Source: Octopus vulgaris
Taxonomy: Eukaryota
Direction of reading: 5' to 3'
DNA length: 64,000 nt
NCBI GenBank assembly: GCA_951406725.2
Contig: OX597820.1
Location: 83,514,001-83,578,000 of the forward strand
Below, in pieces: positions 5,994 through 59,070 of the stretch (positions within the stretch are counted from its first letter, which is position 1; every line of letters begins with the position of its first letter). The position numbers and the translations under genes were made by a program. The notes under the pieces were generated by a model. It saw nothing but the letters and a program-made list of their open reading frames with translations. It ran no database searches and was not told where the DNA came from.

Positions 5994-8741
5994 ATTGTAG
6001 GATTGTTTCAACCTCTGGGCAATATACTTCTGATAATGCATTAAGGATGTTCATCTAAGTATCTTCACCTCGTCCTCGTACCCTTAGTGGTTTCCATCTT
6101 TTCTCAAATTCATGTAACCAGCATGGTCAACGACGCTCCAATTCTTTCTCCTTTCGGACATCAAACTTACCTTTGACATAAAGTCCTTATACACTTTTAT
6201 TCCTTCATTAAAATACGACCTTGATCTTCGACATGATCCTCAACCTGACACCTCTACATTTCTCGGTTGTTTGGTTGAGCTTGTCCTCTTTCTCGATTGC
6301 TTCGCGTTCGCCTTTGAATTTTCCATTTCATCTCGAGATTGGTCGTGGGAACGAGAATGGGCCTCAACAATACTTACCTGTCTGCCGGCTATGTCGAGGC
6401 AAAAATATTCTCTGCCTACATTGATTATACACCTGAGCTATAGTTATCATACTGACGACCGTATCGTCGTGATCTCACTCTCATGCGAACATCTCAACTC
6501 CTACCTCTCTTTCATTCACTTTTTTCATGCCGCCCTCGAATTTTGCTGTTCTGTTTCCAACACTTCTATGAAGTTTCTCGGCATTTCGGTTATATTCCAT
6601 CAGTTCCGGCTACCACTTCAAATCACTATTAACCGACAGACTCACACTCTTACCCCAGCTTATTTCAATCCCACCTTACTCACTACAGATTGTCCACCGT
6701 TTACTAGTACTTCTTCTGTCTCGGCAGGGTATGTAGTGACGTTAATGACTTCGAGAAATATTCCCAAATAATCGCTTGTCACTACACCCAACGAGGATGC
6801 CCTGCGTTATCTAAATCACTCTCACCTATGTCCGATTTGTTGAACCACTCGCGCCCACAAATTAAGTGACCATTTGTTCCGTAGCATCTTTTACACTCCT
6901 GACACCAAACTTGAAACCTTCATTTGCACTTGCCCATGCTGCTACACTCCCCCGTTCTCTCCAACACCTCTATACTTACCAGCAACCAGCATCCACCTAC
7001 CACACTACAATTTCATTCACTTGCACAAAAAGCGATATAATTTCTGCATTTTCTGTTCTCTCTGTCACTCCCTGCATATTCAATAAACTGACAGATTGAC
7101 AAGTTTGCTGACAGGCTGACAAGTTTGCCGAACATCTCCCGAGAAATCATATTTTGCAATGATACAACGATCTCGCCCTACTTCCGCTCGGCTGGTCATT
7201 CGCCAGAACATGTTTGTGTTCGCACCAGTCTCGTACACAAACCAATCGGACTCCTTAATCTATCGAGAGCAGCAATTTATTTTCTCTCCATTCCTCAGCC
7301 CCTCATGGTCTCAATTCATCACATCTCTTAATCTACAGTTACCTCCACACACATTTACACGAGTTATTACTCTTCCTACCTTCCACTGTTCCTCCTCCTC
7401 TAACTGCACACACATTTTCTACACTCGTATACACAATGCACATACCAGACGCACCATATAGATGCACAGCATATACATACACCCAGGGACATGCACAGAG
7501 ATGCATACACACACACATTCCTTCTTTACCAACGCCACCACCAACACTCATCTTCCCACCCATCCACTTATATACATGGACAAGCACCCACATCTCTCAA
7601 CCCCTAACTTCTTTGATCTCTTTTCCACTTTGCGCCTCCATCTAGCTCCACCAATATATATCTCCCCACAACTTACACCAAGAGATAACAGGAACGCGTA
7701 CACATGCTCACTTTCGTACATATGCATAAATAGACACACGCAAAAAAACGCACACTCTCATATATAAACATGCACATTCTCACATAGTCTTCATACCTAC
7801 ACACCTACTCTCCCCTATTCACATAAACCCGAGCTTGCACATACACACATGTACGCGTACGCACACATCCTCACATACATGCTTGTGCGCACGCACTTTA
7901 GGCAGGTCACTGTTGTCGCCATGGGCACATTTGTCCCCAACTATTTTCTTCTTCCCCGTCAATTCGAACCTTTAAACCAAACTGGTTAATTCTTTCTTTC
8001 CTTCTTTCAATTTTTTTTCTTCACTCCATCTGATTCCTCTCCTCGTTTCTTTCTATAGAAGGGCGCACAGCTCGAAATGACGAAGACATTTAAATTTTCT
8101 CTGACTGTCAACCAAATATATCTTGTTTGTTGCTCCCTAACCTGTTTCTGTGTTTTGCTCTTATTTTTTGTACATTTTTGAGACACACACACACACACAC
8201 ACACGCACACAAAAGCACACACACATACATATACATATAATATTGTAAGAAGATCATGAATATATCTTCTTAAAACCTAGAAGTATATAATAATCTTTTG
8301 ATACATTAACCTGATGCAACCCGTCTGTTGTATTATTACTATTAAGAACGATGCTTTATAATTCTGCGTTAATTATTCATTCACATTGCTTTGGCCTCAT
8401 ACGTGTGCTGATATTTAATCTCTACTGTTTTACATACTTTACAATGGAGTGATTTTCCAGAATTTATCCCCAGAGCATACGTATTTTAACGTCTTATTTC
8501 GTTATGCCCTCTCTCCTTACCGATTCGTTTCTATATGATTTTATTTTCTTTCTCACATTCTTGATTATTTTGCATCTTCGTTCGATGTAAAAGGAGATCT
8601 GTATTTTACAACTAATATAATATTATATTCTTCTGAAAACGATACTTAAGACATACGTAATAATTACATACGGGTTATTAAATCAGCAGTATGAAAGAAT
8701 ATATTGAAGTAAGAGTAATATAATTTTCTGTTCTCTTTCAG

Positions 8742-11317: not shown

Positions 11318-14300
11318 ACATGAGCACGCACACAGACACGTGCACGCTCACGCACACAGACACACACACATGCACACACGCGCACACACGAAAAAGAACG
11401 ACCTAAATTCTAAAATGCCAGTGGAAGTCCGTACAAATATCCAGTTTGAAACAGGAAATGAAAGTTTATCTAATGACTTACTTTTCACTACATAACTCGA
11501 ATGTTTTAAATAATTTCTCTAGCAATAATCATTTCAGTTTCTAACAATATTTGTATATTTTCCAATGAAATATTCAGCAAATAAGCAAGAAAGCACTTCC
11601 GTGCGATGTAGGGAGAATAACCTTCAATGCTGCTCAGTATTTTATGGTGGTTGTGTTGTTTACTAAAAAAGCCCTTCATTCTAATTACTTTGCCAAACGT
11701 ATAAATTTCAAGCAGATATACTTCTAACGTCGTTGCTTAATAAATGCATTATCGTGAATTACGTTACTTCTTTCTATTAATCAAATGGGAAAACTACTCA
11801 TATTTTTTAGCACTAAAAATTCTATGCATACGTTTCACTTTCATACGATGGAATATCATATGACTTCTGTACTTTTTGTAAAGCTAACATAGTGAAGTCC
11901 CATTACTACGGACAAAATAGATTTTAGTTGTTAGCTGCAAGATTTCACTTCAAATTGATCAAACTTATCCAAGTATAGATTGTATGTAGTCGTTCGAACT
12001 ACGTGATATAAATAATAAGTTTTGGTTTATGTATCGCAAATTTTATGGAAATATAATATAACGATACGTTGAACAAGGTGGTCCCTCAGATGCAATTAAA
12101 CAGGATCAACATGGATACAAACACTGTAAAAAGGCTGAAATTAGCATCTAAGACAAAATATCAATCTCGATTCCCATGGAGCTGCCTTCTAGCGATGAAT
12201 ATTCGTATAAGAATTGGTTACAAATATTGGCGAATGTACAACATACCACACACATATGCATATAAGTATAGTAATGTGTATACATTTTTAATATATATAG
12301 ACATATATGCGTGTGCATGCCTTCGGGTGTACTCGCAAATTTTATTAACTGATTAAAGATCTCAAGCTACATAAACATACTTGATATGCTTTCGAAAGCT
12401 ACATATTTATAACATAGTGAACTCGGTAAATTTATTAAAACATAAGTTGAATTATTTATAAACACTAATAATAAAGAACAAATGTTATTAGTTATGAAGA
12501 GGATACTGGCTGAATATATGAAAGTTATTCGTGTGCGGTCGGGTAAGTAGAAGACGAAACAATAAAAATGAAATCTTTGAAGTTAGAACGTAGTGAAGGG
12601 GTTTTATTATTATACAGTAATGCAGTAGGATTATTATCTTCATGTTGCTTCCTATTCTCGACCTTCTGCTGTCATTGTACGCCTTAGTCGTTTCCACTTA
12701 ACTCTGAAACTTGGACAGGTGCATTCATTCTAAAGAAATAGATTGTTCTGTTTTTCATTAAATAACTATCTACTTCTTAACAATTCTCGCACGCGTGAAG
12801 CCACTTGGTTGCGCTCTGATGGACGTGAGTTCCATTTTTGTATGACTCTGTATGATTGACTGGCTATTGGAGCGAACTTATAGGCAAAAGATAAGTAAAA
12901 TGTGACTGGCAACACATTGAACTCGTCAGAGTTTTCATTCACGAAGGTACAACAAAATTCTTCACTGCATAGATTGCCAGGGTTTACCATATGGCATAAG
13001 CCTGATTTCCGCAGGCATATCATCCATCATTGCTTTAACATTGATACTCAAAAGTTAGTTATGCCTCATTTCTATATTAAAAAAGGAGCTGACTGCAATT
13101 AATAAAAATGTAATGGCAATTTCAGAGACGCCAAATTTAGTTGCGAAATTGAATACAACTGGGAATATAAGAGGTGCTTATATGTCAACAGGTGTGCATT
13201 TTATATGTTTAGTTAAATATCAGCAGGTATGCAGTCCGTATGGTTAGTGCGATATACATGCACATACATTTAGAAGTGTAGTTCTTATGTTCACGATGGT
13301 TCTGTTTTTGCTGTTAGTTTATTTCCTGATTTGATGAAAAAACATGTTGGTCTTGGTATAATAAATCGTGTTATTTTTAAAGAATTAGGATCCGATTGTT
13401 ATTGGAAAAATGATATTTCTCAATAATCAGACCAATATTTCTTGGTTTAAATATAATTTGAGAGATTTCTACGATATTACTTTGAGAAATATTGCCCTCA
13501 ATTAATATCAAATATACAGAAAACAAATCTTAAAAATGCTTTCCCCCACCAAAATGAAACGTTTCTGTACAGCAAAATCGGTAGCTAACCAAGAAAATAT
13601 AAGGCCATTTTCAGATTCAGCGTCCTTATATTAGCTAAAGATGTTTGGTGTCTGGAAAGCATTTCAAATTTTGCTTTTGTTGACCAGTGTAATTAATAAC
13701 TAGCAGTAAGACCACCCTTTGGCGGATTTGTGCCAGCCCCTTGATAATATTTTCACATTTGATTCCCATTTCTAATAACTTTTATATTTTAATCTAATTA
13801 TTTCTTTGTATAATAGTGCTCACTTGCTTAGTAAATTTTGCTTTCATTATTTTATTAGTCATAATCTCTCTTTAAAGAAAAACATCACGGTAGTCCAACA
13901 TCGGAGGGAGAAGCAGTTTGTCAAGTTTTACCTTTCCCTCAAAGTAACATACAGATTTCAATTGAACAGCCTATCTGTAAGCTTCGCAGTGTGTGTCTGT
14001 GAGAGAGAGAGAGAGAGTGAGAGAGAGAGAGACAGAGAGAGAGAGAAAATATTGCAAACAACGAATGAGGTAATCATTAAATGAATAAATTGTCTAAATA
14101 AATGGGCATTGCTACAGATGTATTCTCCCCCAAATTTTTTGCCGCATAACATCCAGAAAAATGGACACTTTTTAACAAAATTTTCTACAATTACCGCTTC
14201 GATGTTGCGGCTTCAGAGTATATAGGGGTTTGTGCTGAAGACGTCTTGCGAGAAGGTGGAGAGAAGAGTTTCAGAAAATTTACATGATTTCATTTTTTAC

Positions 14301-14886
14301 CTTCATAACATTCGGGTAGATGGGTATCTTTTAATGAAAATTTATACAAATTTCAAACCGCATAGATTACGAGTATAAAGATATTTGTGGGGAAATTTTT
14401 TCCCGGATTTTACCGTTTTTTTTGAAAACCACAGGCTTCGAAATCATGTGCTTGGTGGGGGCACCTTAGAATGAAAACTGTTTGAAAACTCTATTTTTTA
14501 CACCCTATTCCCTCATTATCCCGCTGTGGACCTATTTTGGCCAATCTTTTTGCACTTCAAAACCATGGGAAGAGCATTTCCGGTAAAAAAAAACTTGTTC
14601 ATATTTTCAGAGGTAAATTTGATTTAAGGGCGATTTGGATGTTGTTTCTAGCACATCCAAAGACAACCATCCTTGTTTCTTTATCATTCACGCATATATT
14701 AATGTTTTTTCAATATTTCCCCCCATTAATATATTTTATGCTATATAAAAAAGAAAATTTGAAAAATTATGAATTTTTTGCAACCTCTCTCCCTGACCCT
14801 GATTGTTTCTGTCCAGAAATTAAAATATTAGAGACCCTGAGAAGGCCGTTGTTAGCATTTATCCACAGTGATTTGAAACAAATTAC

Positions 14887-15118
14887 GGAGATGTACTTCC
14901 ATAGCAAGTGACTTCATTTGAGATCGTGTGCTGAGAGAAAAACAATTGCAACGTGGAAGATGTTTGTAAACCATTCTATAACACACATATGCCGTAAGTT
15001 TTACTTCAACATTAAAATTTGATTTGTGCCAAAATATTTTCGTCGCTTTAAATCAGCAACCTGTTCACTGACAAAGCTTCACAAAAGTGATGCATCAGGA
15101 AATATTGTCAGTGAACAG
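14887..15118 (-). mobile_element. Penelope-like terminal-repeat remnant with short fold-back; same family as 37383-37734
   Basis: Aligns with 37383-37575 (ggagatgtac...gagatcgtgtgctga...acaattgca.cgtggaag.tgttt...ctgttcactgacaaag). A 14-bp inverted repeat lies at 15061-15074 / 15105-15118. Confidence 0.65.
15027..15075 (-). ncRNA. Hammerhead-like motif, G3:C8 core variant
   Basis: Minus strand: UUUGUCA-GUGAACA-G-GUUGC-loop-GCGAC-GAA-AAUAUU-U-UGGCA. Manual fold only. Confidence 0.5.
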
Positions 15119-17600
15119 CATACACACTCACATAAACACACACACGCACACACAAATGCACACACACGCACGCTCCTACACGCGCACACACACATCTATT
15201 GCTTTTTATTTTGTGTATGTGTATCTATGAGTGTTTGGAGACTGTGAATAAGGAGCAAGTATGGAGTATTTGTCGGTAATGTTTTCTCCTCGTCTTCTAA
15301 TAGTAATTACCTAACTTTGTAGGCTCTTCTCACAGCTGTCTCGTATTCAAAATTTATAGTTATTTAAAAAATGTTCATTCAATAAATAATGTTTTTTGCA
15401 TTACGTGTACATTAATAGCGAATTAAAATTTAAAAGAGAGAGTGAGTGGCTTTGCAAATGCAAATGGAATACTCTGCAGTGAATGCAATGAATATTTAAA
15501 TTTGAGTTGCGAGAAAGTGGAGTTTTTAAAAAAAATCAATAAACTTGAGAAATCGAATTTATAGAAAATTTTTTAGAACATAAATTTATGAAAATATTTC
15601 AAGGCGGTCAACCCATTAATGATTTGTTTCTTTTAGTACTTTTAGTAATCCTTACATGCTTAATTAATAAGAAGCTTTCTCCATTATAGTATAGATATAA
15701 AAATGGAATGTTTAAAAATGCGCTATTATTTAGTTTATCATGAATTTAATACTCTCAAAGCTACAATATACATACTGAAATTAATATTCAATTTATCAGA
15801 TGAAATGGGAGTATATCCTCGCAGAGAATACCATTCTAGCTTCTTCTATTATTAGAAAAAATTCAAAGTCTTAGAGCTGTTTCTTGGATATCCCTCGGTA
15901 TGTAATATTCTGTCATCAGAGACAAATAATGAAAAAAATAAAGAAAAAGAGAATCGTATATATTAATGAGATAGCGACGTAGAAGTGAGAAAACGAATAA
16001 GGAGATGGAAAGAAAGAAGGGAAAAGCATAAAAGTTAATAGTTCAAATTTCCAAAGTTATAGAACCCAGAGTATGAGTCATTTGGTGCAATCTTGCGTAG
16101 ATCCATGAGGGACATCCCAATAAAAAAGAAGCTAATATATCAGCGTTCAATAACAGAACAGTAGTAAAGATGGCTATTAAGTGGTAAAAGGAAAGAAAAG
16201 AAAAGAAATAGGAGAGGTAGATAGAGAGAGGGTGATTTTAAGGATTGGCTATAGGATAAAGTAAGGGGCTTAGGTGTATGGTGTCTAAGAATTGTCTACG
16301 GGGTAGCTGAGAAGATAAGAGGGACGATGTGGAGATAGAAGAAGAAGACAGGGTAAAAAATAGAGCAAATTGAAAAGAATTTAGAAATATGTGGTAGTCT
16401 TAAAGTCTAAAGTTTAGAAATATGTGGTAGTCTTAAAGTCTAAAGTTGCTGGGGACGAAATTTAATAGTAACTGCTTGTGTCCGTTCTGGCTACGGTCAG
16501 TAGCTGTAGAGTTATTTTTAGAAATAGGGTTATGGGTATTTAGGTAGTTGAGAATGGAAGAGCAAGTTGAATGTTAAGTTATTTATGAGTGGGTGTTAAA
16601 GTTAAGGCATTTATATTAGGAGATTTATTGGGTTACGGTTTTAAAATAAATTAAGGATTAATATATATCTCATAGTGTGAAGAGGTAAGGTAGATAGAAG
16701 AGAGGTAAGATATAATGTAGGAATAAGAGTTACAGTAATATAGAAGGTGCATGTATTATGGTCATTGTGGATTGTATGTGGGTCAATGCGAGGAGTGTGA
16801 GATTTCATTTAAATTTATGACAATATAAAAGTGCAGAAGAATTTGTTCACACGTAGTGAGGACCACGCTGTATTAGTTAAGAAATTGTGGTGAGTTGTGT
16901 GTTAAAACTTTGAAAGCATCTTATAAGCAGAGTCCACTACGGGAGTGTTCGCTCTGATATGGGGTACCCGAGTGTATTATAGCCCAAGAAAGTTTATAAT
17001 ATATTTTTTTATTAATTAAATGGTGTACGTGTCTGGTTAGTGATGTGGCGTTGCTTTTCTCTTTTTATTTAAACGAGCTTAAATGTGTATAATATCTTTG
17101 TTTATAAATGGTACTAGATCCTATGTAGTAGCTACAGGAGTTATCTACCATGTTGTGAACTGCCCTTGCAGTTATCTGTTGCATGATGGTTAATTGGAAA
17201 GGGAGATGAGGCAGTGCTGATAGTAGCTAGTGTGGTATTGGGTGGATCGATTGTGATACTGCTGTTATTATTGCTGTCGTTTTTAGTATTGATATCAACG
17301 CCAGCGTAGCGTTAGCATTGTTATTATTATGGTCATTATCATAATCATTATCGGCGTTGCCATTGTAGTTACTATTATCATTTCTATTACTGTAATAGTA
17401 CTGTATACGACTTGAGATATTTTCCTTGCCTTAATGTTTGCTGTTCTCTGTATCAATTGTATATCCGCTGCATCGGAATTCTGCAATGGCGCCATAACTA
17501 CTGTCTCGGCTATAACCTTCGTACCCTATTAATCCGTTGCAGCACTTACCTAGCGTACCTAATAGTTTAGATGACTTGTGAAATAAACCCCCATACTTTG

Positions 17601-37218: not shown

Positions 37219-37341
37219 GACGCAGGAGTGGCTGTGTGGGAAGTAGCTTGTTTAAACAGCCACATGGTTCCGGGTTCATTAAAGGTGGCGCTCAAGCATG
37301 GCCGCAGTGAAATGACTGAAACAAGTAAAAGAGTAAAAGAG

Positions 37342-37343
<2 letters not shown>
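37219..37343 (+). mobile_element. SINE family C with large internal deletion
   Basis: tRNA head up to gggttca (37277) joined directly to the 3' tail taaaggtggcgctcaagcatggcc...aagtaaaagagta. Confidence 0.85.
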
Positions 37344-37379
<36 letters not shown>

Positions 37380-37382
37380 ATT

Positions 37383-37734
37383 GGAGATGTACTCGCATAG
37401 CAAGTAATTTGATCTGAGATCGTGTGCTGAAACGAAAACAATTGCAGCGTGGAAGGTGTTTATAAGCCATTTAAGAAACACACAAAAGCCGTTCGATTCA
37501 CTTCGACATTTAAGTTTAATTTGTTAAAATATTTTCGCCGCTAAAATCCGCGACCTGTTCACTGACAAAGTCCGTGCTGCATCTCTGAGATGCAGCACGG
37601 ACTTTGTCAGTGAACAGGTCGCGGATTTTAGCGGCGAAAATATTTTGACAAATTAAACTTAAATGTCGAGGTGAATCGAACGGCTTTTGTGTGTTTCTTA
37701 AATGGCTTATAAACACCTTCCACGCTGCAATTGT
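37383..37734. mobile_element. Penelope-like terminal repeat folded back into a 297-bp palindrome (37438-37734)
   Basis: 148-bp arms around a single T at 37586 with 2 mismatches; homologous to 14887-15118; flanked by (TA)n. Confidence 0.75.
37603..37652 (+). ncRNA. Minimal type-I hammerhead-like motif, G3:C8 core variant
   Basis: UUUGUCA / GUGAACA / G / GUCGC-ggauuuua-GCGGC / GAA / AAUAUU palindrome / U / UGACAAA. The mirror copy is on the minus strand at 37520-37569. Confidence 0.55.
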
Positions 37735-37746
37735 ATATATATATAT

Positions 37747-40151
37747 ATTGCGCCAGAGAAAAAATTTGTTTGCTTGTTATCAGTCGTAAGACACTGTTGT
37801 TTTCACCGTTAATGCTTCTGTATTTCATGTTTCTGTATTCCATTATTGTTTTTTGTTTTTTTATATCTGTCCCTTTTGCTGTCCTGGTGTTCGTATGCAT
37901 TCGATCCTTCTTCCAGGAAATCTACGCTTCCAGCTTAGTTTTTCTAATGCTCGTTGCTTGGTTTTTCTTGGAGGGCTGGCCGTGATCTAGTAATCTCAAG
38001 ATTAATCAGCCGAAATTACTACGATGATCCGGTTCTTGACTGAAGACTGAGGGTTTCGAATGTCCTGTCCGTGTTTATTGTGTCGTCTTCTAAGAGTTAT
38101 ACGTTCTTGTCCATGTTGTATTTTTCTACATACCTTAACATATATTCCAGGCGCCCCGTACCCCCCTTAACATTTATGTGAGCACATATTCTTAATAATT
38201 GGTACGACTCTCTGTTTGTCTCTCTCTCTCTCTCTCATTTTTACTTGATCTGTCCCCCTCTCTCTCTTTTCTCTCTACTCATCCTCTTTTTCTCTTCTCT
38301 TTCCTCTGATTCTTTGGTCTAGTCTTCCACTACCCTCCTATTTCTTTGTCTCGCTCTGCACTCACTGGTCATTCTTCGACACCCATCCCTTCTCCTCTCT
38401 GATTCCTTCTTTCTCTCTCTTCTCTCTCTTTGTTGCGTTTGTCCCTCCTCTCTCTCTCTCCTCTCTCTCTCTCTTCCTTTGCTTCTCTTTCTTTTCTTTT
38501 CCCTCTTCTCTGTCACGTGACTGTTGGCCGAAATCTGCCTTTCAGCTTCTGACCCTCGTCGTGTTAACATCGCTGTTTTCGTCCGCCACTATAAAGGCTT
38601 TTTCCATTGCGCCAGAGAAAAAAATTGTTTGCTTGTTATCAGTCGTAAGACACTGTTGTTTTCACCGTTATTGCTTCTGTATTTCATGTTTCTGTATTCC
38701 ATTATTGTTTTTTGTTTTTTTATATCTGTCCCTTTTGCTGTCCTGGTGTTCGTATGCATTCGATCCTTCTTCCAGGAAATCTACGCTTCCAGCTTAGTTT
38801 TTCTAATGCTCGTTGCTTGGTTTTTCTTGGAGGGCTGGCCGTGATCTAGTAATCTCAAGATTAATCAGCCGAAATTACTACGATGATCCGGTTCTTGACT
38901 GAAGACTGAGGGTTTCGAATGTCCTGTCCGTGTTTATTGTGTCGTCTTCTAAGAGTTATACGTTCTTGTCCATGTTGTATTTTTCTACATACCTTAACAT
39001 ATATTCCAGGCGCCCCGTACCCCCCTTAACATTTATGTGAGCACATATTCTTAATAATTGGTACGACTCTCTGTTTGTCTCTCTCTCTCTCTCATTTTTA
39101 CTTGATCTGTCCCCCTCTCTCTCTTTTCTCTCTACTCATCCTCTTTTCTCTTCTCTTTCCTCTGATTCTTTGGTCTAGTCTTCCACTACCCTCCTATTTC
39201 TTTGTCTCGCTCTGCACTCACTGGTCATTCTTCGACACCCATCCCTTCTCCTCTCTGATTCCTTCTTTCTCTCTCTTCTCTCTCTTTGTTGCGTTTGTCC
39301 CTCCTCTCTCTCTCTCCTCTCTCTCTCTCTTCCTTTGCTTCTCTTTCTTTTCTTTTCCCTCTTCTCTGTCACGTGACTGTTGGCCGAAATCTGCCTTTCA
39401 GCTCCTGACCCTCGTCGTGTTAACATCGCTGTTTTCGTCCGCCACTATAAAGGCTTTTTCCATTGCGCCAGAGAAAAAAATTTGTTTGCTTGTTATCAGT
39501 CGTAAGACACTGTTGTTTTCACCGTTAATGCTTCTGTATTTCATGTTTCTGTATTCCATTATTGTTTTTTGTTTTTTTATATCTGTCCCTTTTGCTGTCC
39601 TGGTGTTCGTATGCATTCGATCCTTCTTCCAGGAAATCTACGCTTCCAGCTTAGTTTTTCTAATGCTCGTTGCTTGGTTTTTCTTGGAGGGCTGGCCGTG
39701 ATCTAGTAATCTCAAGATTAATCAGCCGAAATTACTACGATGATCCGGTTCTTGACTGAAGACTGAGGGTTTCGAATGTCCTGTCCGTGTTTATTGTGTC
39801 GTCTTCTAAGAGTTATACGTTCTTGTCCATGTTGTATTTTTCTACATACCTTAACATATATTCCAGGCGCCCCGTACCCCCCTTAACATTGTGAGCACAT
39901 ATTCTTAATAATTGGTACGACTCTCTGTTTGTCTCTCTCTCTCTCTCATTTTTCTTGATCTGTCCCCCTCTCTCTCTTTTCTCTCTACTCATCCTCTTTT
40001 TCTCTTCTCTTTCCTCTGATTCTTTGGTCTAGTCTTCCACTACCCTCCTATTTCTTTGTCTCGCTCTGCACTCATTCATTCTTCGACACCCATCCCTTCT
40101 CCTCTCTGATTCCTTCTTTCTCTCTCTTCTTTCTCTTTGTTGCGTTTGTCC

Positions 40152-43070: not shown

Positions 43071-44146
43071 AAATCCTTAAATCCTTAAAAATGTTTTAGC
43101 CCGAAGCCCGCGGCCCTGCTGGGGCACCAGCGCTGAATGAGCTACACTAATTTGTGAATCCACCTCTGATACGTGGCACTTGATCAACAAGGGAGTTCGA
43201 TGCTGCCCGCATCTGTGTCTCCTGTCGTGAGGTAGGTTCATCTGGGACTCCCGACAAGAAGAGATCCAGTTTAGTTTTAAAGAAACCCACATCCACACCA
43301 TGTAAGTCTCTCAGGCATCTAGGGAGGATGTTAAGGAGATGTGGTCCTCTGAAACCGAAGCCGTTGCAGTATCTGGACCTGTATTTTGATGGTGATGTTG
43401 GAATCCTTGTCACCATGCAGTGGCGCCCCCTTCTGCGGTTGGGGTAACTTTGAATGCCAAATTTTGGGACAAGACCCTCCAGGATTTTCCAGATGTATAT
43501 CACCTCATATCTCTCCCGCCTCCGATCTAGGGAGACGAGGTTTAATACCATCAGTCTTTCCCAGTAGCTGATATTTTGCATTGAGACGATTTTCATTGTG
43601 TAGCTTCTCTGAATTGCTTCGAGTTCTGCTATTAGTTTTATATTGTGTGGTGACCACAGTTGGGAGCAGTAGTCCAAGCGGCTGAGGACGAATGTTTTCT
43701 ATAGGACCATTAGTGTCTCCTTCTCTCTTGTTCTGAATGTTCGGAGAATCCATCCAGCTAGCCGTCTGCATTTTATCACCAGATTAGCAATATGCACTTG
43801 GAAAGATGCATCATTGCTCATGTCAATGCCCAGGTCACGCACTGATTTTGACTCAGGGATTGCAATTCTTCCTGGGCACGTTGTATCCAGTCTGCACGTT
43901 GTTTACCTTTGTGTGCCAGTAGCGCAGGGCCTGGAACTTACCTGCATTAAACTGCATGTTGTTGTCCTCAGCCCACCTGTATATTGTGTCCAACTCCTGT
44001 TGCAGATGCGCAATATTTTCAGGGTTTTGTATTGCATGGGAGACTTTTGTGTCATCTGCATAGCTCGCAAAGGTGGTCACCGTAGCAACTGAAGGCATGT
44101 CTGAAAGGGCCACTATGAACATCAGTGGCCCCAAGACAGTGCCCTG
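43071..44146 (-). mobile_element. 5'-truncated CR1-type LINE (RT C-terminal half), frameshifted
   Basis: QGTVLGPLMFIVALSDMP...YADDTK (43853-44146); DYCSQLWSPH...LEAIQRSYT...SYWERL..LNLVSLDRRRERY (43147-43677); 3' tail (AAGGATTT)x2 at 43071-43086. Confidence 0.9.
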
Positions 44147-44203
44147 TATATATTTATATATATATAATTATATATATTTATATATATATATATATATTTA
44201 TAA

Positions 44204-44232
<29 letters not shown>

Positions 44233-44234
<2 letters not shown>

Positions 44235-46080
44235 CTTTGATACTTTGATACTTTGATAGGTTTCGGCCATTATTGGCCCAGGCCATGTCTAACCCAATAG
44301 CACCACCTGGTGAAGTCTTTCAAGTCAGAATTTGGGCACTATGGCCCACTCAAGTAGAGAGTTATTGTTTACAGAGACATATCCGGGTGTAGGGGGTTTA
44401 TCCGGGATTTCTTGAAGGAATCTGTCCAAAGACTTCTTGAACCCTATAGGGTCAGTTTCTGTTTTAATGTGTTTTGGTGTAATGTTAAAGAGAGCGGGGC
44501 CAATTGAGGTGAAATAATTGTGCCGTATTGTTGTTATGAGATGAGAGTGCGATTTTTGTTTTGGGCGGATGGCACGGGGCCCAAGCCTTGGATGTACCTT
44601 AAAGGTGATGCCAACATCATTTGGGCAATGCTGATGGAATATTTTCCACATCATGCAGATGATGTAGCGCTCACGACGACGTTGGAGAGAATAGAGTTTA
44701 AGCTTTTCTAGTCGACCCCAATAGTCGAGGCCTGTCATGCCATCTATCTTTTTTTGTGATTGCCCTTTGAGGTGCTTCGACTTTTATGATACCTTGTATT
44801 GTGTGGGGAGACCACAGTGGACAACAGTATTCAAGGTGGGGTCGGGCAAAAGTGGAGAAGAGAAGGATAATGGTGTGGATATCTCTCGACTGGAAAGTTC
44901 TGAGAATCCAGGAACACATTCTGCGGGCCATGTCAACTTTGGTGTTTATATGAGTGGCCCAGCTTACGTTGTTGTCCACAATTACTCCCAAGTCTCTGAT
45001 GTTGTTGGACGCCGCGAGAGTTTCACCTGAAGGAAGGGAGTATGGGAGTTTCAGGGCATCCTCTTTTCCAAAGTGGATTAGCTCAAATTTATCCTCGTTC
45101 AGCAGCATATTGTTTTTTTTTTGTTTTTTTCTGCCCATTGGATAACAGCCAGTAGATCTGACTGAAGGCATGTCCGGTCACTCGCCTCATTTATGACCTT
45201 CTGTAGCTTGGAGTCATCTGCAAAGATTTTTATGTTGCTGTGCTTGATGATGTCATTAATGTCATTAATGTAAATGATGAAAAGAAGTGGGCCCAGCACA
45301 GTGCCTTGCGGAACGCCACTACTGACTTTGGCTGGGCTTGATTTTACCCCTTCAACTACAACATGTTGAGATCTGTCTGTCAGGAAACACTTAATCCATT
45401 TCAGTAACTTTCCAGAGACACCAATGTTGGATAGTTTTTTCAATAGGATCTTGTGATCGACCCTGTCGAAGGCCTTACTGAAATCAAGGTAGATGACATC
45501 GGTGTTGGAGCCCTCTCCCAAAGCTCTCAAAATGTCCTCAAAGTGATGCAGGAGCTGCGTTAGGCAGTCCCTTCCATTACGGAACCCATGTTGGTTGGAG
45601 ATCAGCCGTCTGTTGCTTTCCAGAAATTGGGTTATTTGAGATCTCACCACCCTCTCAAATACCTTGATGATATGAGAGGTGAGTGAGATCGGACGGTAAT
45701 TCACTGCAAGGGACTTGTTTCCCTTTTTGAAAACTGGGACAACAGACTGGGACAGAAGGTTTTTTGGAATATAGCCAGCATCCAGTGAGTTTCTCCACAG
45801 ATTAGCAAGGGGAGATGCAAGTTGGTGTCGACACACCTTCAGGACACAAGCAGGGAACCTATCGGGGCCTACTGCTGAATTGTGTTTTATTTCGTTTATC
45901 GCCAATAAGACATCAGGGGCACTAAACGTTATGTCCGATATAGTGTGTTGGGGGTTGACATCACTGATACAGCCCAGATCGGCCATATCAGGATTGCTGA
46001 AAACAGAGCAGTATTGTTTCTGCAGTATCTCGGCCATGGATTTGGCATTATCTTGGAGAGTGCCAGTTTCGTCAATTAAT
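44233..46080 (-). mobile_element. 5'-truncated CR1-type LINE, near-intact RT region
   Basis: YRPISLTSHIIKVFERVV, QHGFRNGRDC, YLDFSKAFDRVDH, GVPQGTVLGPLLFIIYINDI, FADDSK; continues through ORFs 44698-45171 and 44325-44738 via two A-run frameshifts; 3' tail (TCAAAGTA)x3 at 44233-44256. Confidence 0.95.
45099..46080 (-). pseudogene. Reverse transcriptase domain of a CR1-type LINE (truncated)
   Basis: RT motifs as above in ORF 45099-46184; the track's N-terminus upstream of 46080 is microsatellite, not element sequence. Confidence 0.9.
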
Positions 46081-46701
46081 GTATATATATATACAATGTA
46101 TATATATATACATATATATTTATTTTGTGTATATATATATTTTTTCATACATATACGTACATGCACACATACGCACATACACATACGCTGCTCTGTGTGT
46201 CTTTCCGTTAGCTCTTATATGGGACTATCAATATGTATTTTAAGAACCAAATCTGGGTTTCCCTCCATAGATTATGCGAATTTGGTTTCTCCGCTCAACA
46301 AACGATGATATATATATGTTTGTGTGTGTGCGTGTGTTTGCGCGTGTGTCTGCGCACTCGTTTGTATGGATCTATTCTGCTGCTAATCCTACATGATTTT
46401 ATTTGTGCGGTATTATTCATTTTCATATACTACATCCCTTCAATCACATGAAGACATGTAGTCTGCCAAGTTAGAATTTAAATCTATATATGTGAAGGAA
46501 ATTAAATGAGATAGAACGAACGAAAAATATATTTTCTATAACGATTGCTATAGCCATCTTCTACAGATCAATAGTCAGTGCTCTTTTGTATGTTTTCTCA
46601 AATATATACGAGGAGACAGTATATTTTCTGAAATTTATACGAGGAGACAGCTGAAGTGAGTATAAAATCGAAATGAATATTATAGTAACAATACGAGGAT
46701 A

Positions 46702-58589: not shown

Positions 58590-58640
58590 AACATCAAAAA
58601 ATACCTTATGAATAAGAACCCATGTTCGAAATTTCCTCAA

Positions 58641-58686
58641 AACACCTGATGAAGGCTGGAGGGTATATCGGCCGAAACGTTGTGTT
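58641..58686 (+). ncRNA. Minimal type-I hammerhead ribozyme motif (canonical core)
   Basis: AACAC / CUGAUGA / A / GGCUG-loop-CGGCC / GAA / ACGU palindrome / U / GUGUU; helices I and II pair fully. Confidence 0.7.
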
Positions 58687-59070
58687 AACAACAAACAAGA
58701 TGAGGACAAATATCCGTAAATAATGTAAATAATGTACATAACTCCTCATCTCTTAAATATAGAACTGTATTCTGTTGTCAATGTTCATTGTTCGGGCTGA
58801 CAAATTTTATTTTCTCAAAATATCCTTTTAATTACTTTTGGTGGTACAATAGTATAGCATATACTATACTAAAATAATGGTTATTTTGTTTAGTTGCTTA
58901 TATTTTCTTCTATTGTTCCATTATATGCTAAAGACGGTTGATGTTTTTTACTGTTTCAAAATGTCTTTTGCGAATTCTAGGAGTGGCTCCCGGTTTTTCT
59001 GTTTACATGATATTACTTCGGAATATATATCAATTATGCTTTCTGTAGATCTAATGATCACTAGGCATGA

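What the first reader, a model, noticed from the sequence alone, without database searches (positions are those of the whole stretch)
37603..37652. Hammerhead fold with a swapped catalytic tertiary pair (G3:C8 instead of C3:G8)
Seen: helix I UUUGUCA/UGACAAA (7 bp), core GUGAACA, one extra G, helix II GUCGC/GCGGC, GAA, a self-complementary AAUAUU in place of helix III, then U. Established: the hammerhead core is CUGANGA...GAAA...NUH; C3 and G8 form a Watson-Crick tertiary pair whose double swap can rescue cleavage; minimal type-I HHRs with palindromic helix III occur in Penelope-like elements and act as dimers. Inference: this is a natural G3:C8 variant that searches fixed on CUGANGA would miss. 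Caveat: the cleavage triplet would be UUU, a poor one.
Basis: partly seen in the sequence, partly recalled or inferred. Interest (0 to 1): 0.85.

Follow-up and report, generated by a model that had tools for sequence, protein, structure and literature searches.

The report
Swapped-core hammerhead motif in abundant retroelement
The 50-base motif is real and is the hammerhead-ribozyme-like part of a short mobile element present thousands of times in this animal genome; it looks like a natural hammerhead whose C3:G8 core pair is swapped to G3:C8, but whether it still cuts RNA is untested, and this copy is an inert insertion buried in a long palindrome.

Summary
**Observation:** confirmed letter for letter at 37603-37652.

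- The motif lies in the right arm of a 297-nt, 99 % self-complementary palindrome (37438-37734).
- It is the consensus feature of a ~208-nt dispersed repeat. There are about 6,300-6,500 young copies, plus at least 3,500 candidate older copies carried inside a Helitron family.

**What the repeat is.** It inserts like a Penelope-like element (PLE):
- About half of 40 unbiased loci are head-to-head inverted pairs.
- 20 of 21 pairs have one arm ending at ~208 and one at ~148 (a "tail" at one end only).
- The inner 5′ ends are ragged.
- TSDs of 6-11 bp flank the whole unit.
- Targets are (TA)n or AT-rich.

**The motif.**
- It sits on the sense strand, about 90 nt upstream of the first 3′ end.
- It shows the hallmarks of PLE minimal hammerheads: an extra nucleotide after A9, a G10.1-C11.1 pair and a palindromic helix III.
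- Only C3→G and G8→C depart from the canonical core.
- Across three subfamily stages only loop II changed, plus a 2-nt deletion that perfected helix I.

**Against catalysis.** Helix III is all A-U. No copy begins at the predicted cut site. A G3/G8 variant still spread. No autonomous partner was found.

**Verdict:** interpretation partly supported. This is a new variant of a known kind.

The parts
37343..37382 (.). (TA)n tract flanking the insertion on the left (target microsatellite)
   Evidence: Read directly from the sequence. 25 of 40 sampled family insertions have at least 8 nt of (TA)n on one or both sides.
37383..37585 (-). Long arm: family consensus positions 1-203 on the minus strand, including the ~60-nt 'tail' (149-208)
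   Evidence: BLAST of the 208-nt consensus gives 98.5 % identity over q1-203; alignment.
37520..37569 (-). Mirror copy of the hammerhead-like motif in the long arm. It has a helix I mismatch (UAACAAA instead of UGACAAA).
   Evidence: Alignment. The descriptor does not call it because helix I is broken next to the core.
37586..37586 (.). Single-base spacer (T) at the head-to-head junction, where the two 5' ends meet
   Evidence: Junctions in other dimers vary (1, 5 or 17 nt, or small deletions).
37587..37734 (+). Short arm: consensus positions 1-148 on the plus strand, ending at the first of the two recurrent 3' ends
   Evidence: 98 % identity over q1-148. The short-arm class ending at 140-155 is seen in 20 of 21 pairs.
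37603..37652 (+). Helix I 37603-09 / 37646-52; core GUGAACA 37610-16; unpaired G 37617; helix II 37618-22 / 37631-35 with loop 37623-30; GAA 37636-38; AAUAUU 37639-44; U17 37645; predicted cut between 37645 and 37646.
   Evidence: Both arms share GCGGC and GTCGA, which differ from the family consensus, so both arms were copied from one template.
37735..37750 (.). (TA)n tract flanking the insertion on the right
   Evidence: Read directly from the sequence.
14882..15100 (-). Older copy of the same module (84 % identical to the young consensus, core GUGAACA kept), carried inside a ~2-kb non-autonomous Helitron copy (13696-15695, minus strand)
   Evidence: Helitron termini A|TC... and ...hairpin-CTAG|T were defined.

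Best explanation
What it is. Window 37383-37734 is one insertion of a short (~208 nt), non-coding, very abundant retroelement. The element is mobilised in the manner of Penelope-like elements (PLEs). The insertion landed in a (TA)n tract as a head-to-head pair: a long arm on the minus strand and a short arm on the plus strand. That pairing is what creates the 297-nt palindrome.

The motif. It lies on the sense strand at positions 17-66 of the element. The predicted cut site is about 90 nt upstream of the first reverse-transcription start (~148), and a second start lies at ~208. It has the architecture of PLE minimal hammerheads, but with the C3:G8 tertiary pair replaced by G3:C8.

How it most likely works (inferred). 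In the element's RNA the module folds into the three-way junction. There it acts either as a weak, probably protein-assisted, self-cleaving hammerhead, or as a hammerhead-shaped structural element of the retrotransposition RNP.
- I estimate about 0.75 that the motif descends from a genuine hammerhead.
- I estimate about 0.35 that it cleaves detectably, either as a tandem or dimer RNA or with the PLE protein.
- Cleavage does not define the ends of the element.

This copy. The genomic copy in the window is an inert insertion. Any read-through transcript would fold into a 148-bp hairpin, which excludes the hammerhead fold.

Shown versus inferred.
- Shown: the anatomy, the copy number, the insertion signature and the substitution pattern of the master lineage.
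- Inferred: homology to hammerheads, the PLE machinery, and any catalysis.
For: Family
- The 5' 20-mer occurs 6,321 times and a 3' anchor 6,498 times; both reversed controls give 0.

PLE-type insertion signature, from an unbiased sample of 40 anchor loci
- 21 clean inverted pairs, all in the head-to-head order.
- 20 of 21 pairs have one arm ending at 195 or beyond and one ending at 140-155. None is long/long or short/short.
- Solo copies also end at either site (13 long, 6 short).
- 5' ends are ragged: 31 of 61 at positions 1-10, 9 at 17-19, and the rest spread up to 99. So the inner ends are 5' ends and the plus orientation is the sense strand.
- TSDs of 6-11 bp abut solo copies and whole dimers (L090, L100, L101, L104, L106, L118, L119, L029).
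- 25 of 40 loci sit in (TA)n.

Literature match
- PMC8557442 describes 5' truncation, an adjacent inverted copy, a tail at one end and a microsatellite or (TA)n bias.
- PMC11167929 reports AT-rich cleavage, extension of both target strands, and two internal RT start sites 85-92 nt downstream of the HHR cut. Here the spacing is 89-91 nt.

Motif
- It meets the hallmarks listed in PMC4209133: an extra nucleotide between 9 and 10.1, G10.1-C11.1, and a palindromic 15.2-16.2.
- The solo consensus RNA keeps helices I and II in its minimum-energy fold.
- Chance rate is 0.0005 per 64 kb.

Master-lineage evolution
- Across the old, intermediate and young stages, loop II shows 4 events in 8 nt.
- The other 42 motif positions show 1 event, a 2-nt deletion that perfects helix I. 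Fisher p = 0.0014.
- G3:C8 is already present in the Helitron-borne fossils.

Other evidence
- A second family (group A) has a complete canonical CUGAAGA hammerhead. It shares the same helix I strand, the same extra G and the same head-to-head architecture.
- Experiments show the C3G/G8C double mutant is partly active, including in a PLE hammerhead.
- The genome holds a large young PLE population.
Against: - No autonomous partner was linked. The one abundant 781-aa PLE I could sample has no hammerhead core and no similarity to the module, either in the ~290 nt upstream of its ATG or in the ~870 nt after its stop.
- Similarity to the canonical group A family was partly forced by my search pattern: 14 of 16 positions were fixed.
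- The motif's 42 constrained positions are not significantly more conserved than the rest of the element (1/42 versus 13/142, p = 0.20). Other 16-25-nt blocks are equally unchanged.
- Helix III would be six A-U pairs (-0.2 kcal/mol), and two motif RNAs do not cofold into a hammerhead dimer.
- No sampled copy starts at positions 58-61.
- A G3/G8 variant reached 269 copies and occurs in both arms of several dimers, so the 3:8 pair is not needed for spread.
- True module copies with C3:G8 number only 2, which is what chance predicts.
- There are no direct tandem arrays that could supply a second motif in cis.
- Rfam finds no hammerhead. This is weak evidence, because Rfam also misses the canonical min-HHR at 58.6 kb.
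Confidence: 0.65

Rival explanations
1. Chance resemblance. The 50 nt are ordinary internal sequence of a short retroposon or SINE-like repeat. They happen to satisfy a relaxed hammerhead descriptor and were then amplified thousands of times. There is no hammerhead ancestry and no RNA function.
For: - The descriptor was written after seeing the motif.
- Two 'invariant' core positions differ, and helix III has no loop.
- The genome-wide expectation for random hits is not zero: 0.0005-0.025 per 64 kb scales to tens or hundreds of hits in 2.8 Gb.
- Conservation of the motif is not significantly above the rest of the element (p = 0.20).
- Rfam is negative.
- Individual copies show no selection.
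Against: - The host element independently shows a PLE-type insertion signature. PLEs are the elements known to carry exactly this minimal hammerhead type.
- The motif lies at the PLE-like distance from the RT start.
- Features the descriptor did not require are present (G10.1-C11.1, sense-strand location).
- Loop II turned over while stems and core stayed fixed (p = 0.0014).
- The one fixed change in a stem improved pairing.
Confidence: 0.2
2. The palindrome is the functional unit. The 297-nt inverted repeat is transcribed into a long hairpin RNA that feeds a small-RNA pathway (siRNA, piRNA or miRNA-like), and the hammerhead likeness is irrelevant.
For: - The hairpin is perfect: -269 kcal/mol, z = -41.
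- Generic miRNA-precursor models match the centre at E of 1e-7 to 1e-11, though far below their gathering scores.
- Roughly half of the family's insertions are such hairpins, so hairpin RNAs from this family are plausible substrates for silencing.
Against: - All Rfam hits are below threshold, occur on both strands, and reflect any long perfect hairpin.
- The palindrome is explained as an insertion by-product: TSDs flank whole dimers, the arms share private variants, and junctions vary.
- Nothing marks this copy out from hundreds to thousands of similar dimers.
- No expression data are available.
Confidence: 0.08
3. A DNA-transposon derivative (MITE or foldback element) with long terminal inverted repeats, or an assembly artefact (a chimeric palindromic read).
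For: - The long inverted repeat resembles a foldback element.
- The solo consensus has short complementary ends, GAGATG...CATCTC.
Against: - The arms are unequal in a fixed way (148 versus 208), the inner ends are ragged, solo half-elements are common, and TSD length varies from 6 to 11 bp. None of this fits cut-and-paste elements.
- The same architecture recurs at dozens of independent loci with different flanks and TSDs, which rules out an artefact.
- The older carriers are Helitrons, but the young family has neither the 5' TC nor the 3' CTRR end.
Confidence: 0.02

Closest known systems
Minimal type-I hammerheads of Penelope-like elements (min-HHRs; Cervera & de la Pena 2014, PMC4209133)
   Same: - Helix I is open and helix II is a hairpin.
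- There is an unpaired nucleotide between A9 and 10.1, and a G10.1-C11.1 pair.
- Helix III is reduced to a short palindrome, so activity is expected only as a dimer.
- Thousands of dispersed copies, mostly single.
- Pairs on opposite strands a few hundred nt apart.
- Low intrinsic activity.
   Different: - The core reads GUGAACA rather than CUGANGA (C3 to G, G8 to C).
- The helix III palindrome is all A-U.
- The host is a ~208-nt non-coding element, not the pLTR of an identified PLE.
U3-A8 core covariant of Schistosoma mansoni Cercyon PLE hammerheads (about 1,300 copies; PMC4209133)
   Same: A natural, high-copy PLE-associated hammerhead in which the 3:8 tertiary pair is replaced by another Watson-Crick pair.
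   Different: Here the pair is the strand swap G3:C8 rather than U3:A8. G8 is replaced by a pyrimidine, and experiments show that change is tolerated only partly.
Engineered C3G/G8C double mutants (cited in PMC8495972; the PAc Poseidon PLE hammerhead in PMC11167929)
   Same: The same two substitutions. Each single mutant is dead, and the double mutant partly restores cleavage, including in a PLE hammerhead that needs its protein.
   Different: Those are laboratory constructs. This is a natural sequence kept in a transposon lineage through three subfamily stages, and its activity has not been measured.
Poseidon/Penelope-type PLE insertions (PMC8557442, PMC11167929)
   Same: - AT-rich or (TA)n targets.
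- Head-to-head inverted copies.
- A 'tail' at only one end, equal to the distance between two RT start sites.
- RT starts about 90 nt downstream of the hammerhead cut.
- 5' truncation and variable TSDs.
   Different: - No ORF and no direct partial tandem (pLTR).
- The tail is about 60 nt rather than 30-40.
- The autonomous partner is not identified.
Animal non-LTR retrozymes (PLE-derived hammerhead repeats; bioRxiv 10.64898/2026.07.22.740005)
   Same: Short, non-autonomous, hammerhead-bearing repeats thought to depend on PLEs.
   Different: Retrozymes are direct tandem arrays that give circular RNAs cut at the hammerhead. This family is dispersed, occurs solo or as inverted pairs, and its ends do not coincide with the predicted cut.

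Membership tests
Hammerhead ribozyme (type I, PLE minimal class) | Three-way junction: helix I open, helix II a hairpin, core strands in the right order | tested here: met
   Sequence. Helices I and II appear in the minimum-energy fold of the 50-mer and of the 208-nt solo consensus RNA.
Hammerhead ribozyme (type I, PLE minimal class) | 5' core box C3-U4-G5-A6-N7-G8-A9 | tested here: not met
   The core reads G-U-G-A-A-C-A. U4, G5, A6 and A9 are present; positions 3 and 8 both differ. The same holds in the old, intermediate and young consensuses.
Hammerhead ribozyme (type I, PLE minimal class) | 3' core G12-A13-A14 followed by A15.1, with U16.1 and H17 before the cut | tested here: met
   GAA-A...U-U (37636-37645). 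H17 is U. The triplet UUU obeys the NUH rule.
Hammerhead ribozyme (type I, PLE minimal class) | Watson-Crick tertiary pair between positions 3 and 8 | tested here: inconclusive
   G3 and C8 can pair. Between families the state is C:G (group A) versus G:C (the module). Within the family, double variants occur only at the chance level (2 copies), and a G3/G8 variant spread to 269 copies.
Hammerhead ribozyme (type I, PLE minimal class) | PLE min-HHR hallmarks: a nucleotide between 9 and 10.1, a G10.1-C11.1 pair, a palindromic 15.2-16.2 | tested here: met
   G at 37617; G37618 pairs with C37635; AUAU at 37640-37643. The criteria are from PMC4209133.
Hammerhead ribozyme (type I, PLE minimal class) | Helix covariation across relatives | tested here: inconclusive
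   Copies decay neutrally. The master lineage shows stems and core fixed while loop II varies (p = 0.0014), but not a significant difference from the rest of the element (p = 0.20).
Hammerhead ribozyme (type I, PLE minimal class) | Site-specific, Mg-dependent self-cleavage | not testable with these tools
   Indirect evidence only: no copy 5' ends at positions 58-61, and the dimeric helix III is about -0.2 kcal/mol.
Rfam hammerhead families | A match to a curated covariance model | tested here: not met
   No hammerhead model matches at E of 10 or below. The same scan also misses the canonical min-HHR at 58641-58690, so this test has little power for this class.
Penelope-like-element-type retroelement (non-autonomous) | An inverted copy adjacent at the 5' end (head-to-head), with 5' truncation | tested here: met
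   21 clean pairs in 40 loci, all head-to-head; inner ends range from 1 to 99.
Penelope-like-element-type retroelement (non-autonomous) | Two discrete 3' ends, with the 'tail' at only one end of the insertion | tested here: met
   20 of 21 pairs are long plus short; none is long/long or short/short. Solo copies: 13 long, 6 short.
Penelope-like-element-type retroelement (non-autonomous) | AT-rich or microsatellite target and TSDs of variable length | tested here: met
   (TA)n on at least one side at 25 of 40 loci; TSDs of 6-11 bp.
Penelope-like-element-type retroelement (non-autonomous) | Partial direct tandem forming pseudo-LTRs | tested here: not met
   No regular direct tandems in 40 + 30 loci, only occasional internal duplications (L018, L125).
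Penelope-like-element-type retroelement (non-autonomous) | Mobilised by a PLE reverse transcriptase with a GIY-YIG endonuclease | tested here: inconclusive
   The genome has at least 5,955 GIY-YIG candidates, many in intact 781-aa frames. The one copy I sampled shares nothing with the module.
MITE / foldback DNA transposon | Equal terminal inverted repeats and a TSD of fixed length | tested here: not met
   Arms are unequal (148 versus 208), solo half-units are common, and TSDs range from 6 to 11 bp.
miRNA / hairpin-RNA gene | A match above the curated threshold, or evidence of processing | tested here: not met
   The best hit is 57.8 bits against a gathering score of 90. Hits occur on both strands and are generic to hairpins.

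The most novel reading that the evidence does not exclude
The G3:C8 module is a catalytically competent natural hammerhead, self-cleaving as a dimer or with the PLE protein, kept for tens of millions of years in a hyper-abundant PLE-dependent retroelement. It would be the first natural strand-swapped 3:8 pair. It would also show that searches fixed on CUGANGA miss whole hammerhead families. PLE lineages that target (TA)n and are currently described as lacking canonical hammerheads might be among those affected.
Probability: 0.3. Interest if true: 0.7.

Novelty: new variant of a known kind. Interest (0 to 1): 0.55.

Why it matters
**Structural confirmation.** If the module cleaves, it gives natural, evolutionary confirmation of the C3-G8 tertiary pair. 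So far that pair is supported by crystal structures, by engineered double mutants, and by one other natural covariant (U3-A8).

**Search practice.** Descriptor-based hammerhead censuses undercount whatever departs from CUGANGA. This matters for the open question of what hammerheads do in Penelope-like elements and why some PLE clades seem to lack them.

**Value independent of catalysis.** The family is a clean natural record of PLE-type insertion mechanics:
- two reverse-transcription start sites;
- a tail at exactly one end in 20 of 21 inverted pairs;
- complete 5' ends meeting head-to-head.

That record could be mined to test models derived from the single in-vitro system available.

**For genome annotation.** The family creates hundreds to thousands of perfect ~150-bp-arm palindromes next to (TA)n tracts. 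These can mislead assemblers and hairpin or miRNA finders.

Tried and rejected
1. **Rfam at gathering and at E ≤ 10.** No hammerhead hit. A canonical min-HHR in the same window is also missed, so I gave this little weight.
2. **tRNA or pol-III SINE head.** None found. Both strands contain T4 runs.
3. **My early reading that the 'core' is ancestrally base-paired in a conserved 20-bp hairpin.** Withdrawn. The 'old family' is a Helitron that carries a fossil head-to-head module copy, so that hairpin is the same insertion by-product.
4. **MITE or TIR idea based on the GAGATG/CATCTC ends.** Rejected because TSDs vary in length and the inner ends are ragged.
5. **Helitron origin of the young family.** Its termini do not fit.
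6. **Enrichment of compensatory C3:G8 doubles within the family.** The 14 hits resolve into 8 copies of another family, 4 unrelated sequences and only 2 true module copies, which equals the chance expectation.
7. **A gene-conversion tract in L079/L088.** The helix II differences between the arms are ordinary CpG transitions.
8. **Homology of the module to group A.** The score is significant (z = 6-9), but it was largely forced by the search pattern.
9. **Post-insertion selection or helix covariation among 98 copies.** None, as expected for dead copies.
10. **Search for the autonomous partner.**
    - The abundant 781-aa PLE has no hammerhead core near its ORF start or in the ~870 nt after its stop.
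    - RT fragments in the window (43.8-46.2 kb) are decayed and lack GIY-YIG.
11. **Assembly artefact.** Excluded by recurrence at independent loci with TSDs.
Full report
**1. Observation.**
- It reads UUUGUCA / GUGAACA / G / GUCGC-GGAUUUUA-GCGGC / GAA / AAUAUU / U / UGACAAA.
- Alone, the 50-mer folds into helices I and II (-14.1 kcal/mol; 3 of 200 shuffles fold as well).
- A descriptor modelled on the motif requires:
  - helix I;
  - an NUGANNA core with a Watson-Crick 3:8 pair;
  - 0-1 extra nucleotide;
  - helix II of at least 4 bp;
  - GAA;
  - an A...U helix III that is a palindrome or a small hairpin;
  - H17.
- That descriptor is rare in 2,207 dinucleotide shuffles of the window. The rate is 0.0005 per 64 kb for the swapped core with helix I of at least 7 bp, and 0.025 for any 3:8 pair with helix I of at least 5 bp.
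- The descriptor is post hoc, and a rare chance hit in a transposon consensus could be amplified. Rarity alone therefore proves nothing.

The motif lies entirely in the right arm of a palindrome.
- The arms are 37438-37585 and 37587-37734. They are 148 nt long, 99 % complementary, and 1 nt apart.
- As one RNA the region folds into a single perfect hairpin of -269 kcal/mol.
- The left arm continues outward to about 37383. (TA)n tracts flank the whole unit.
- Both arms share two differences from the family consensus (GCGGC for GCGAC, GTCGA for GTTGA), and they differ from each other at two positions. They were therefore copied from one template and have since drifted slightly.

**3. It is a repeat family.** The window comes from a 2.8-Gb, 227-contig eukaryotic genome.
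- The arm is a dispersed repeat with a 208-nt consensus that runs GAGATGCAGCACGGAC...CATCTCCGTAAT and is usually followed by (TA)n.
- The 5' 20-mer occurs 6,321 times and a 3' anchor 6,498 times. The reversed controls give none.
- Copies are 98-100 % identical to the consensus in the best-scoring set.
- An 84 % identical copy at 14882-15100 belongs to a set with at least 3,496 candidates.
- That set turned out to be a ~2-kb non-autonomous Helitron. Its 5' end is A|TCTATACTATAATGG and its 3' end is a GC hairpin plus CTAG|T. It carries an ancient copy of the module internally.
- I first read a 20-bp hairpin in those copies as evidence that the 'core' is ancestrally paired, and I withdraw that. 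The hairpin is a fossil of the family's usual head-to-head partial duplication, amplified passively by the Helitron.

**4. How the family inserts.** I took an unbiased sample, the first 40 anchor loci on contig 1.
- 21 loci are clean inverted pairs (24 counting short arms). All have their ragged ends facing each other; none has the opposite order.
- In 20 of the 21 pairs, one arm ends at position 195 or beyond (~208) and the other at 140-155 (~148). No pair is long/long or short/short.
- Solo copies use either end (13 long, 6 short).
- Inner ends are ragged: 31 of 61 at positions 1-10, 9 at 17-19, and the rest scattered up to 99.
- Discrete outer ends with ragged inner ends identify the outer ends as 3' ends (reverse-transcription starts).
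- TSDs of 6-11 bp directly abut solo copies and whole dimers (L029, L090, L100, L101, L104, L106, L118, L119). Each dimer is therefore one insertion event.
- 25 of 40 loci have (TA)n on at least one side.

Each of these traits is described for Penelope-like elements.
- PMC8557442 reports strong 5' truncation, an inverted copy adjacent at the 5' end, a 'tail' often at only one end, and a microsatellite or (TA)n bias.
- PMC11167929 reports cleavage of AT-rich DNA, extension of both target strands, and two internal reverse-transcription start sites whose spacing is the tail.
- In that element the first start lies 85-92 nt downstream of the hammerhead cut. In the module the predicted cut (positions 59/60) lies 89-91 nt upstream of the ~148 end.
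- I found no direct partial tandems (pLTRs), and the tail here is about 60 nt rather than 30-40.

**5. The motif against what is known.** Cervera & de la Pena (PMC4209133) list features of PLE minimal hammerheads that were not part of their search descriptor.
- They also report pairs of motifs on opposite strands 100-700 bp apart, and a natural core covariant, U3-A8, with about 1,300 copies in Schistosoma.
- Experimentally, C3G or G8C alone abolishes cleavage and the double mutant partly restores it, including in a PLE hammerhead that needs its protein (PMC11167929; PMC8495972).
- In that system hammerhead mutants did not affect insertion, and no RNA ends were seen at the cut site.
- I found no report of a natural G3-C8 hammerhead in the library I could search.
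- Rfam reports no hammerhead here. It also misses a canonical-core min-HHR at 58641-58690 in the same window.

**6. Evolutionary evidence.**
- *Three stages of the master lineage* can be read: old (Helitron-borne), intermediate (n = 10) and young (n = 49).
  - Of 18 fixed events across positions 17-208, four fall in the 8-nt loop II.
  - One falls in the other 42 motif positions. It is a 2-nt deletion that converts helix I from 5 bp + bulge + 3 bp into a clean 7-bp helix.
  - Thirteen fall in the remaining 142 positions.
  - Loop versus stems-and-core gives Fisher p = 0.0014. Motif versus the rest of the element gives p = 0.20.
  - The pattern has the right shape for a structured RNA. It is not strong, and it is post hoc.
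- *Individual copies* decay equally inside and outside the motif, as dead copies should.
- *Pattern counts in the family context* are C3/C8 = 36, G3/G8 = 269 and C3/G8 = 14.
  - The 14 resolve into 2 true module copies, which is the chance expectation.
  - Four are unrelated sequences.
  - Eight are copies of a different family, 'group A'.
- *Group A* carries a complete canonical hammerhead, UUGUCA-CUGAAGA-G-GUCACA...UGUGAC-GAAA...GGACAA.
  - It has the same helix I strand, the same extra G and the same head-to-head architecture as the module.
  - The module is far closer to group A than either is to the 58.6-kb hammerhead (z = 6-9 versus about 0).
  - But 14 of the matching positions were imposed by my search pattern. 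This is suggestive of common descent, not proof.
- *The G3/G8 variant* appears in both arms of several dimers. A template with a broken 3:8 pair was therefore still mobilised.

**7. Limits on catalysis.**
- Helix III would be six A-U pairs (-0.2 kcal/mol), and two motif RNAs do not cofold as a hammerhead dimer.
- There are no direct tandem copies to supply a second motif in cis. In inverted dimers the second motif is antisense.
- No sampled copy begins at positions 58-61.
- In the solo consensus RNA, helices I and II are part of the minimum-energy fold, but the overall energy is unremarkable (z = -0.9).
- At the window locus the hairpin would out-compete the motif by about 250 kcal/mol.

**8. 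Conclusion and mechanism.**
- Window 37383-37734 is one insertion of a PLE-type non-autonomous retroelement into a (TA)n tract.
- The palindrome is the insertion's head-to-head long-arm/short-arm structure.
- I put about 0.75 on hammerhead ancestry.
- I put about 0.35 on detectable cleavage, either as a dimer or with the PLE protein.
- Otherwise the module is a hammerhead-shaped structural part of the retrotransposition RNA, or a relic.
- Cleavage does not set the element's ends and is not needed for spread.

**9. The partner.**
- The genome has a very large and partly intact PLE population: at least 5,955 GIY-YIG candidates, many within identical 781-aa open frames.
- The single copy I could sample has no hammerhead core and no similarity to the module near its ORF start or in the ~870 nt after its stop.
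The link to a specific autonomous element is therefore open, and it is the main gap in the PLE assignment.

**10. Novelty.**
- The class (PLE minimal hammerheads) and the principle (natural 3:8 covariation, rescue by the double swap) are known.
- A natural, long-lived, high-copy G3:C8 core appears not to have been described.
- I file it as a new variant of a known kind, of moderate interest, rising to high interest if cleavage is shown.

Noticed in passing
window 58641-58690 (+); element about 58590-58769: A canonical-core minimal type-I hammerhead: AACAC-CUGAUGA-A-GGCU...GGCC-GAA-ACGU-U-GUGUU. It lies inside a ~240-nt repeat next to an (AAT)n tract. The family has at least 3,329 candidates at 90-94 % identity. 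Rfam does not report it even at E of 10 or below.
   Followed up: partly
window 13696-15695 (-); loci L031-L066: A ~2-kb non-autonomous Helitron family (5' A|TCTATACTATAATGG..., 3' GC-hairpin-CTAG|T) with at least 3,496 candidates. It carries an internal (GT)n followed by a fossil head-to-head copy of the hammerhead-bearing module. This is an example of a Helitron passively amplifying another element's sequence.
   Followed up: yes
loci L067-L069, L071, L075-L077, L080-L087 (genome G000, several contigs): 'Group A': another dispersed family with a complete canonical hammerhead (CUGAAGA core). It has the same helix I strand and the same extra G as the module. In L081, L085 and L087 an inverted partial copy lies directly upstream.
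   Followed up: partly
genome-wide counts, e.g. G000:C1:106186066/106186103 and C5:42739220/42739259: A sub-lineage of the module with C8 changed to G (G3/G8, pair broken) has 269 copies. It occurs in both arms of several head-to-head dimers, so it was itself retrotransposed.
   Followed up: partly
L088 (G000:C18:35457400-35458300): One intermediate-age head-to-head dimer. Its left arm keeps GUGAACA while its right arm reads CUGAAGA (the canonical pair). Otherwise the helix II region of the arms differs only by CpG transitions. A single case, compatible with chance.
   Followed up: yes
sample loci L100, L102, L104, L105, L114, L121: A recurrent inner 5' end at position 17-19, exactly the first base of helix I, in 9 of 61 arms. 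It is usually opposite an arm that reaches positions 1-5. I have no explanation for this.
   Followed up: no
window 37221-37341 (also next to module copies in L003, L006, L014, L015): A different, very common SINE-like repeat (...GGCCGCAGTGAAATGACTGAAACAAGTAAAAGAGTAAAAGAG) that also ends at (TA)n tracts. (TA)n microsatellites seem to be shared landing sites or tails for several families.
   Followed up: no
window 37747-37841 and 38606-38700: A 95-nt direct repeat, 98 % identical, 859 bp apart, immediately right of the insertion. CT-rich low-complexity sequence lies between the two copies.
   Followed up: no
window 43853-46184 (-): Decayed reverse-transcriptase fragments: RVT_1 with E = 3e-27 in a 361-aa ORF and a second fragment with E = 8.5e-8. 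No GIY-YIG domain was found nearby, and the type of retroelement was not determined.
   Followed up: partly
genome G000, e.g. C5:1041986-1044281 (L129, L130): A young PLE family with an intact 781-aa ORF (C-terminal GIY-YIG), present in many copies with identical domain scores. I saw no hammerhead core in the ~290 nt before its ATG or in the ~870 nt after its stop. The 3' region contains tandem GATTGGTCA...TGATGACGTC repeats.
   Followed up: partly
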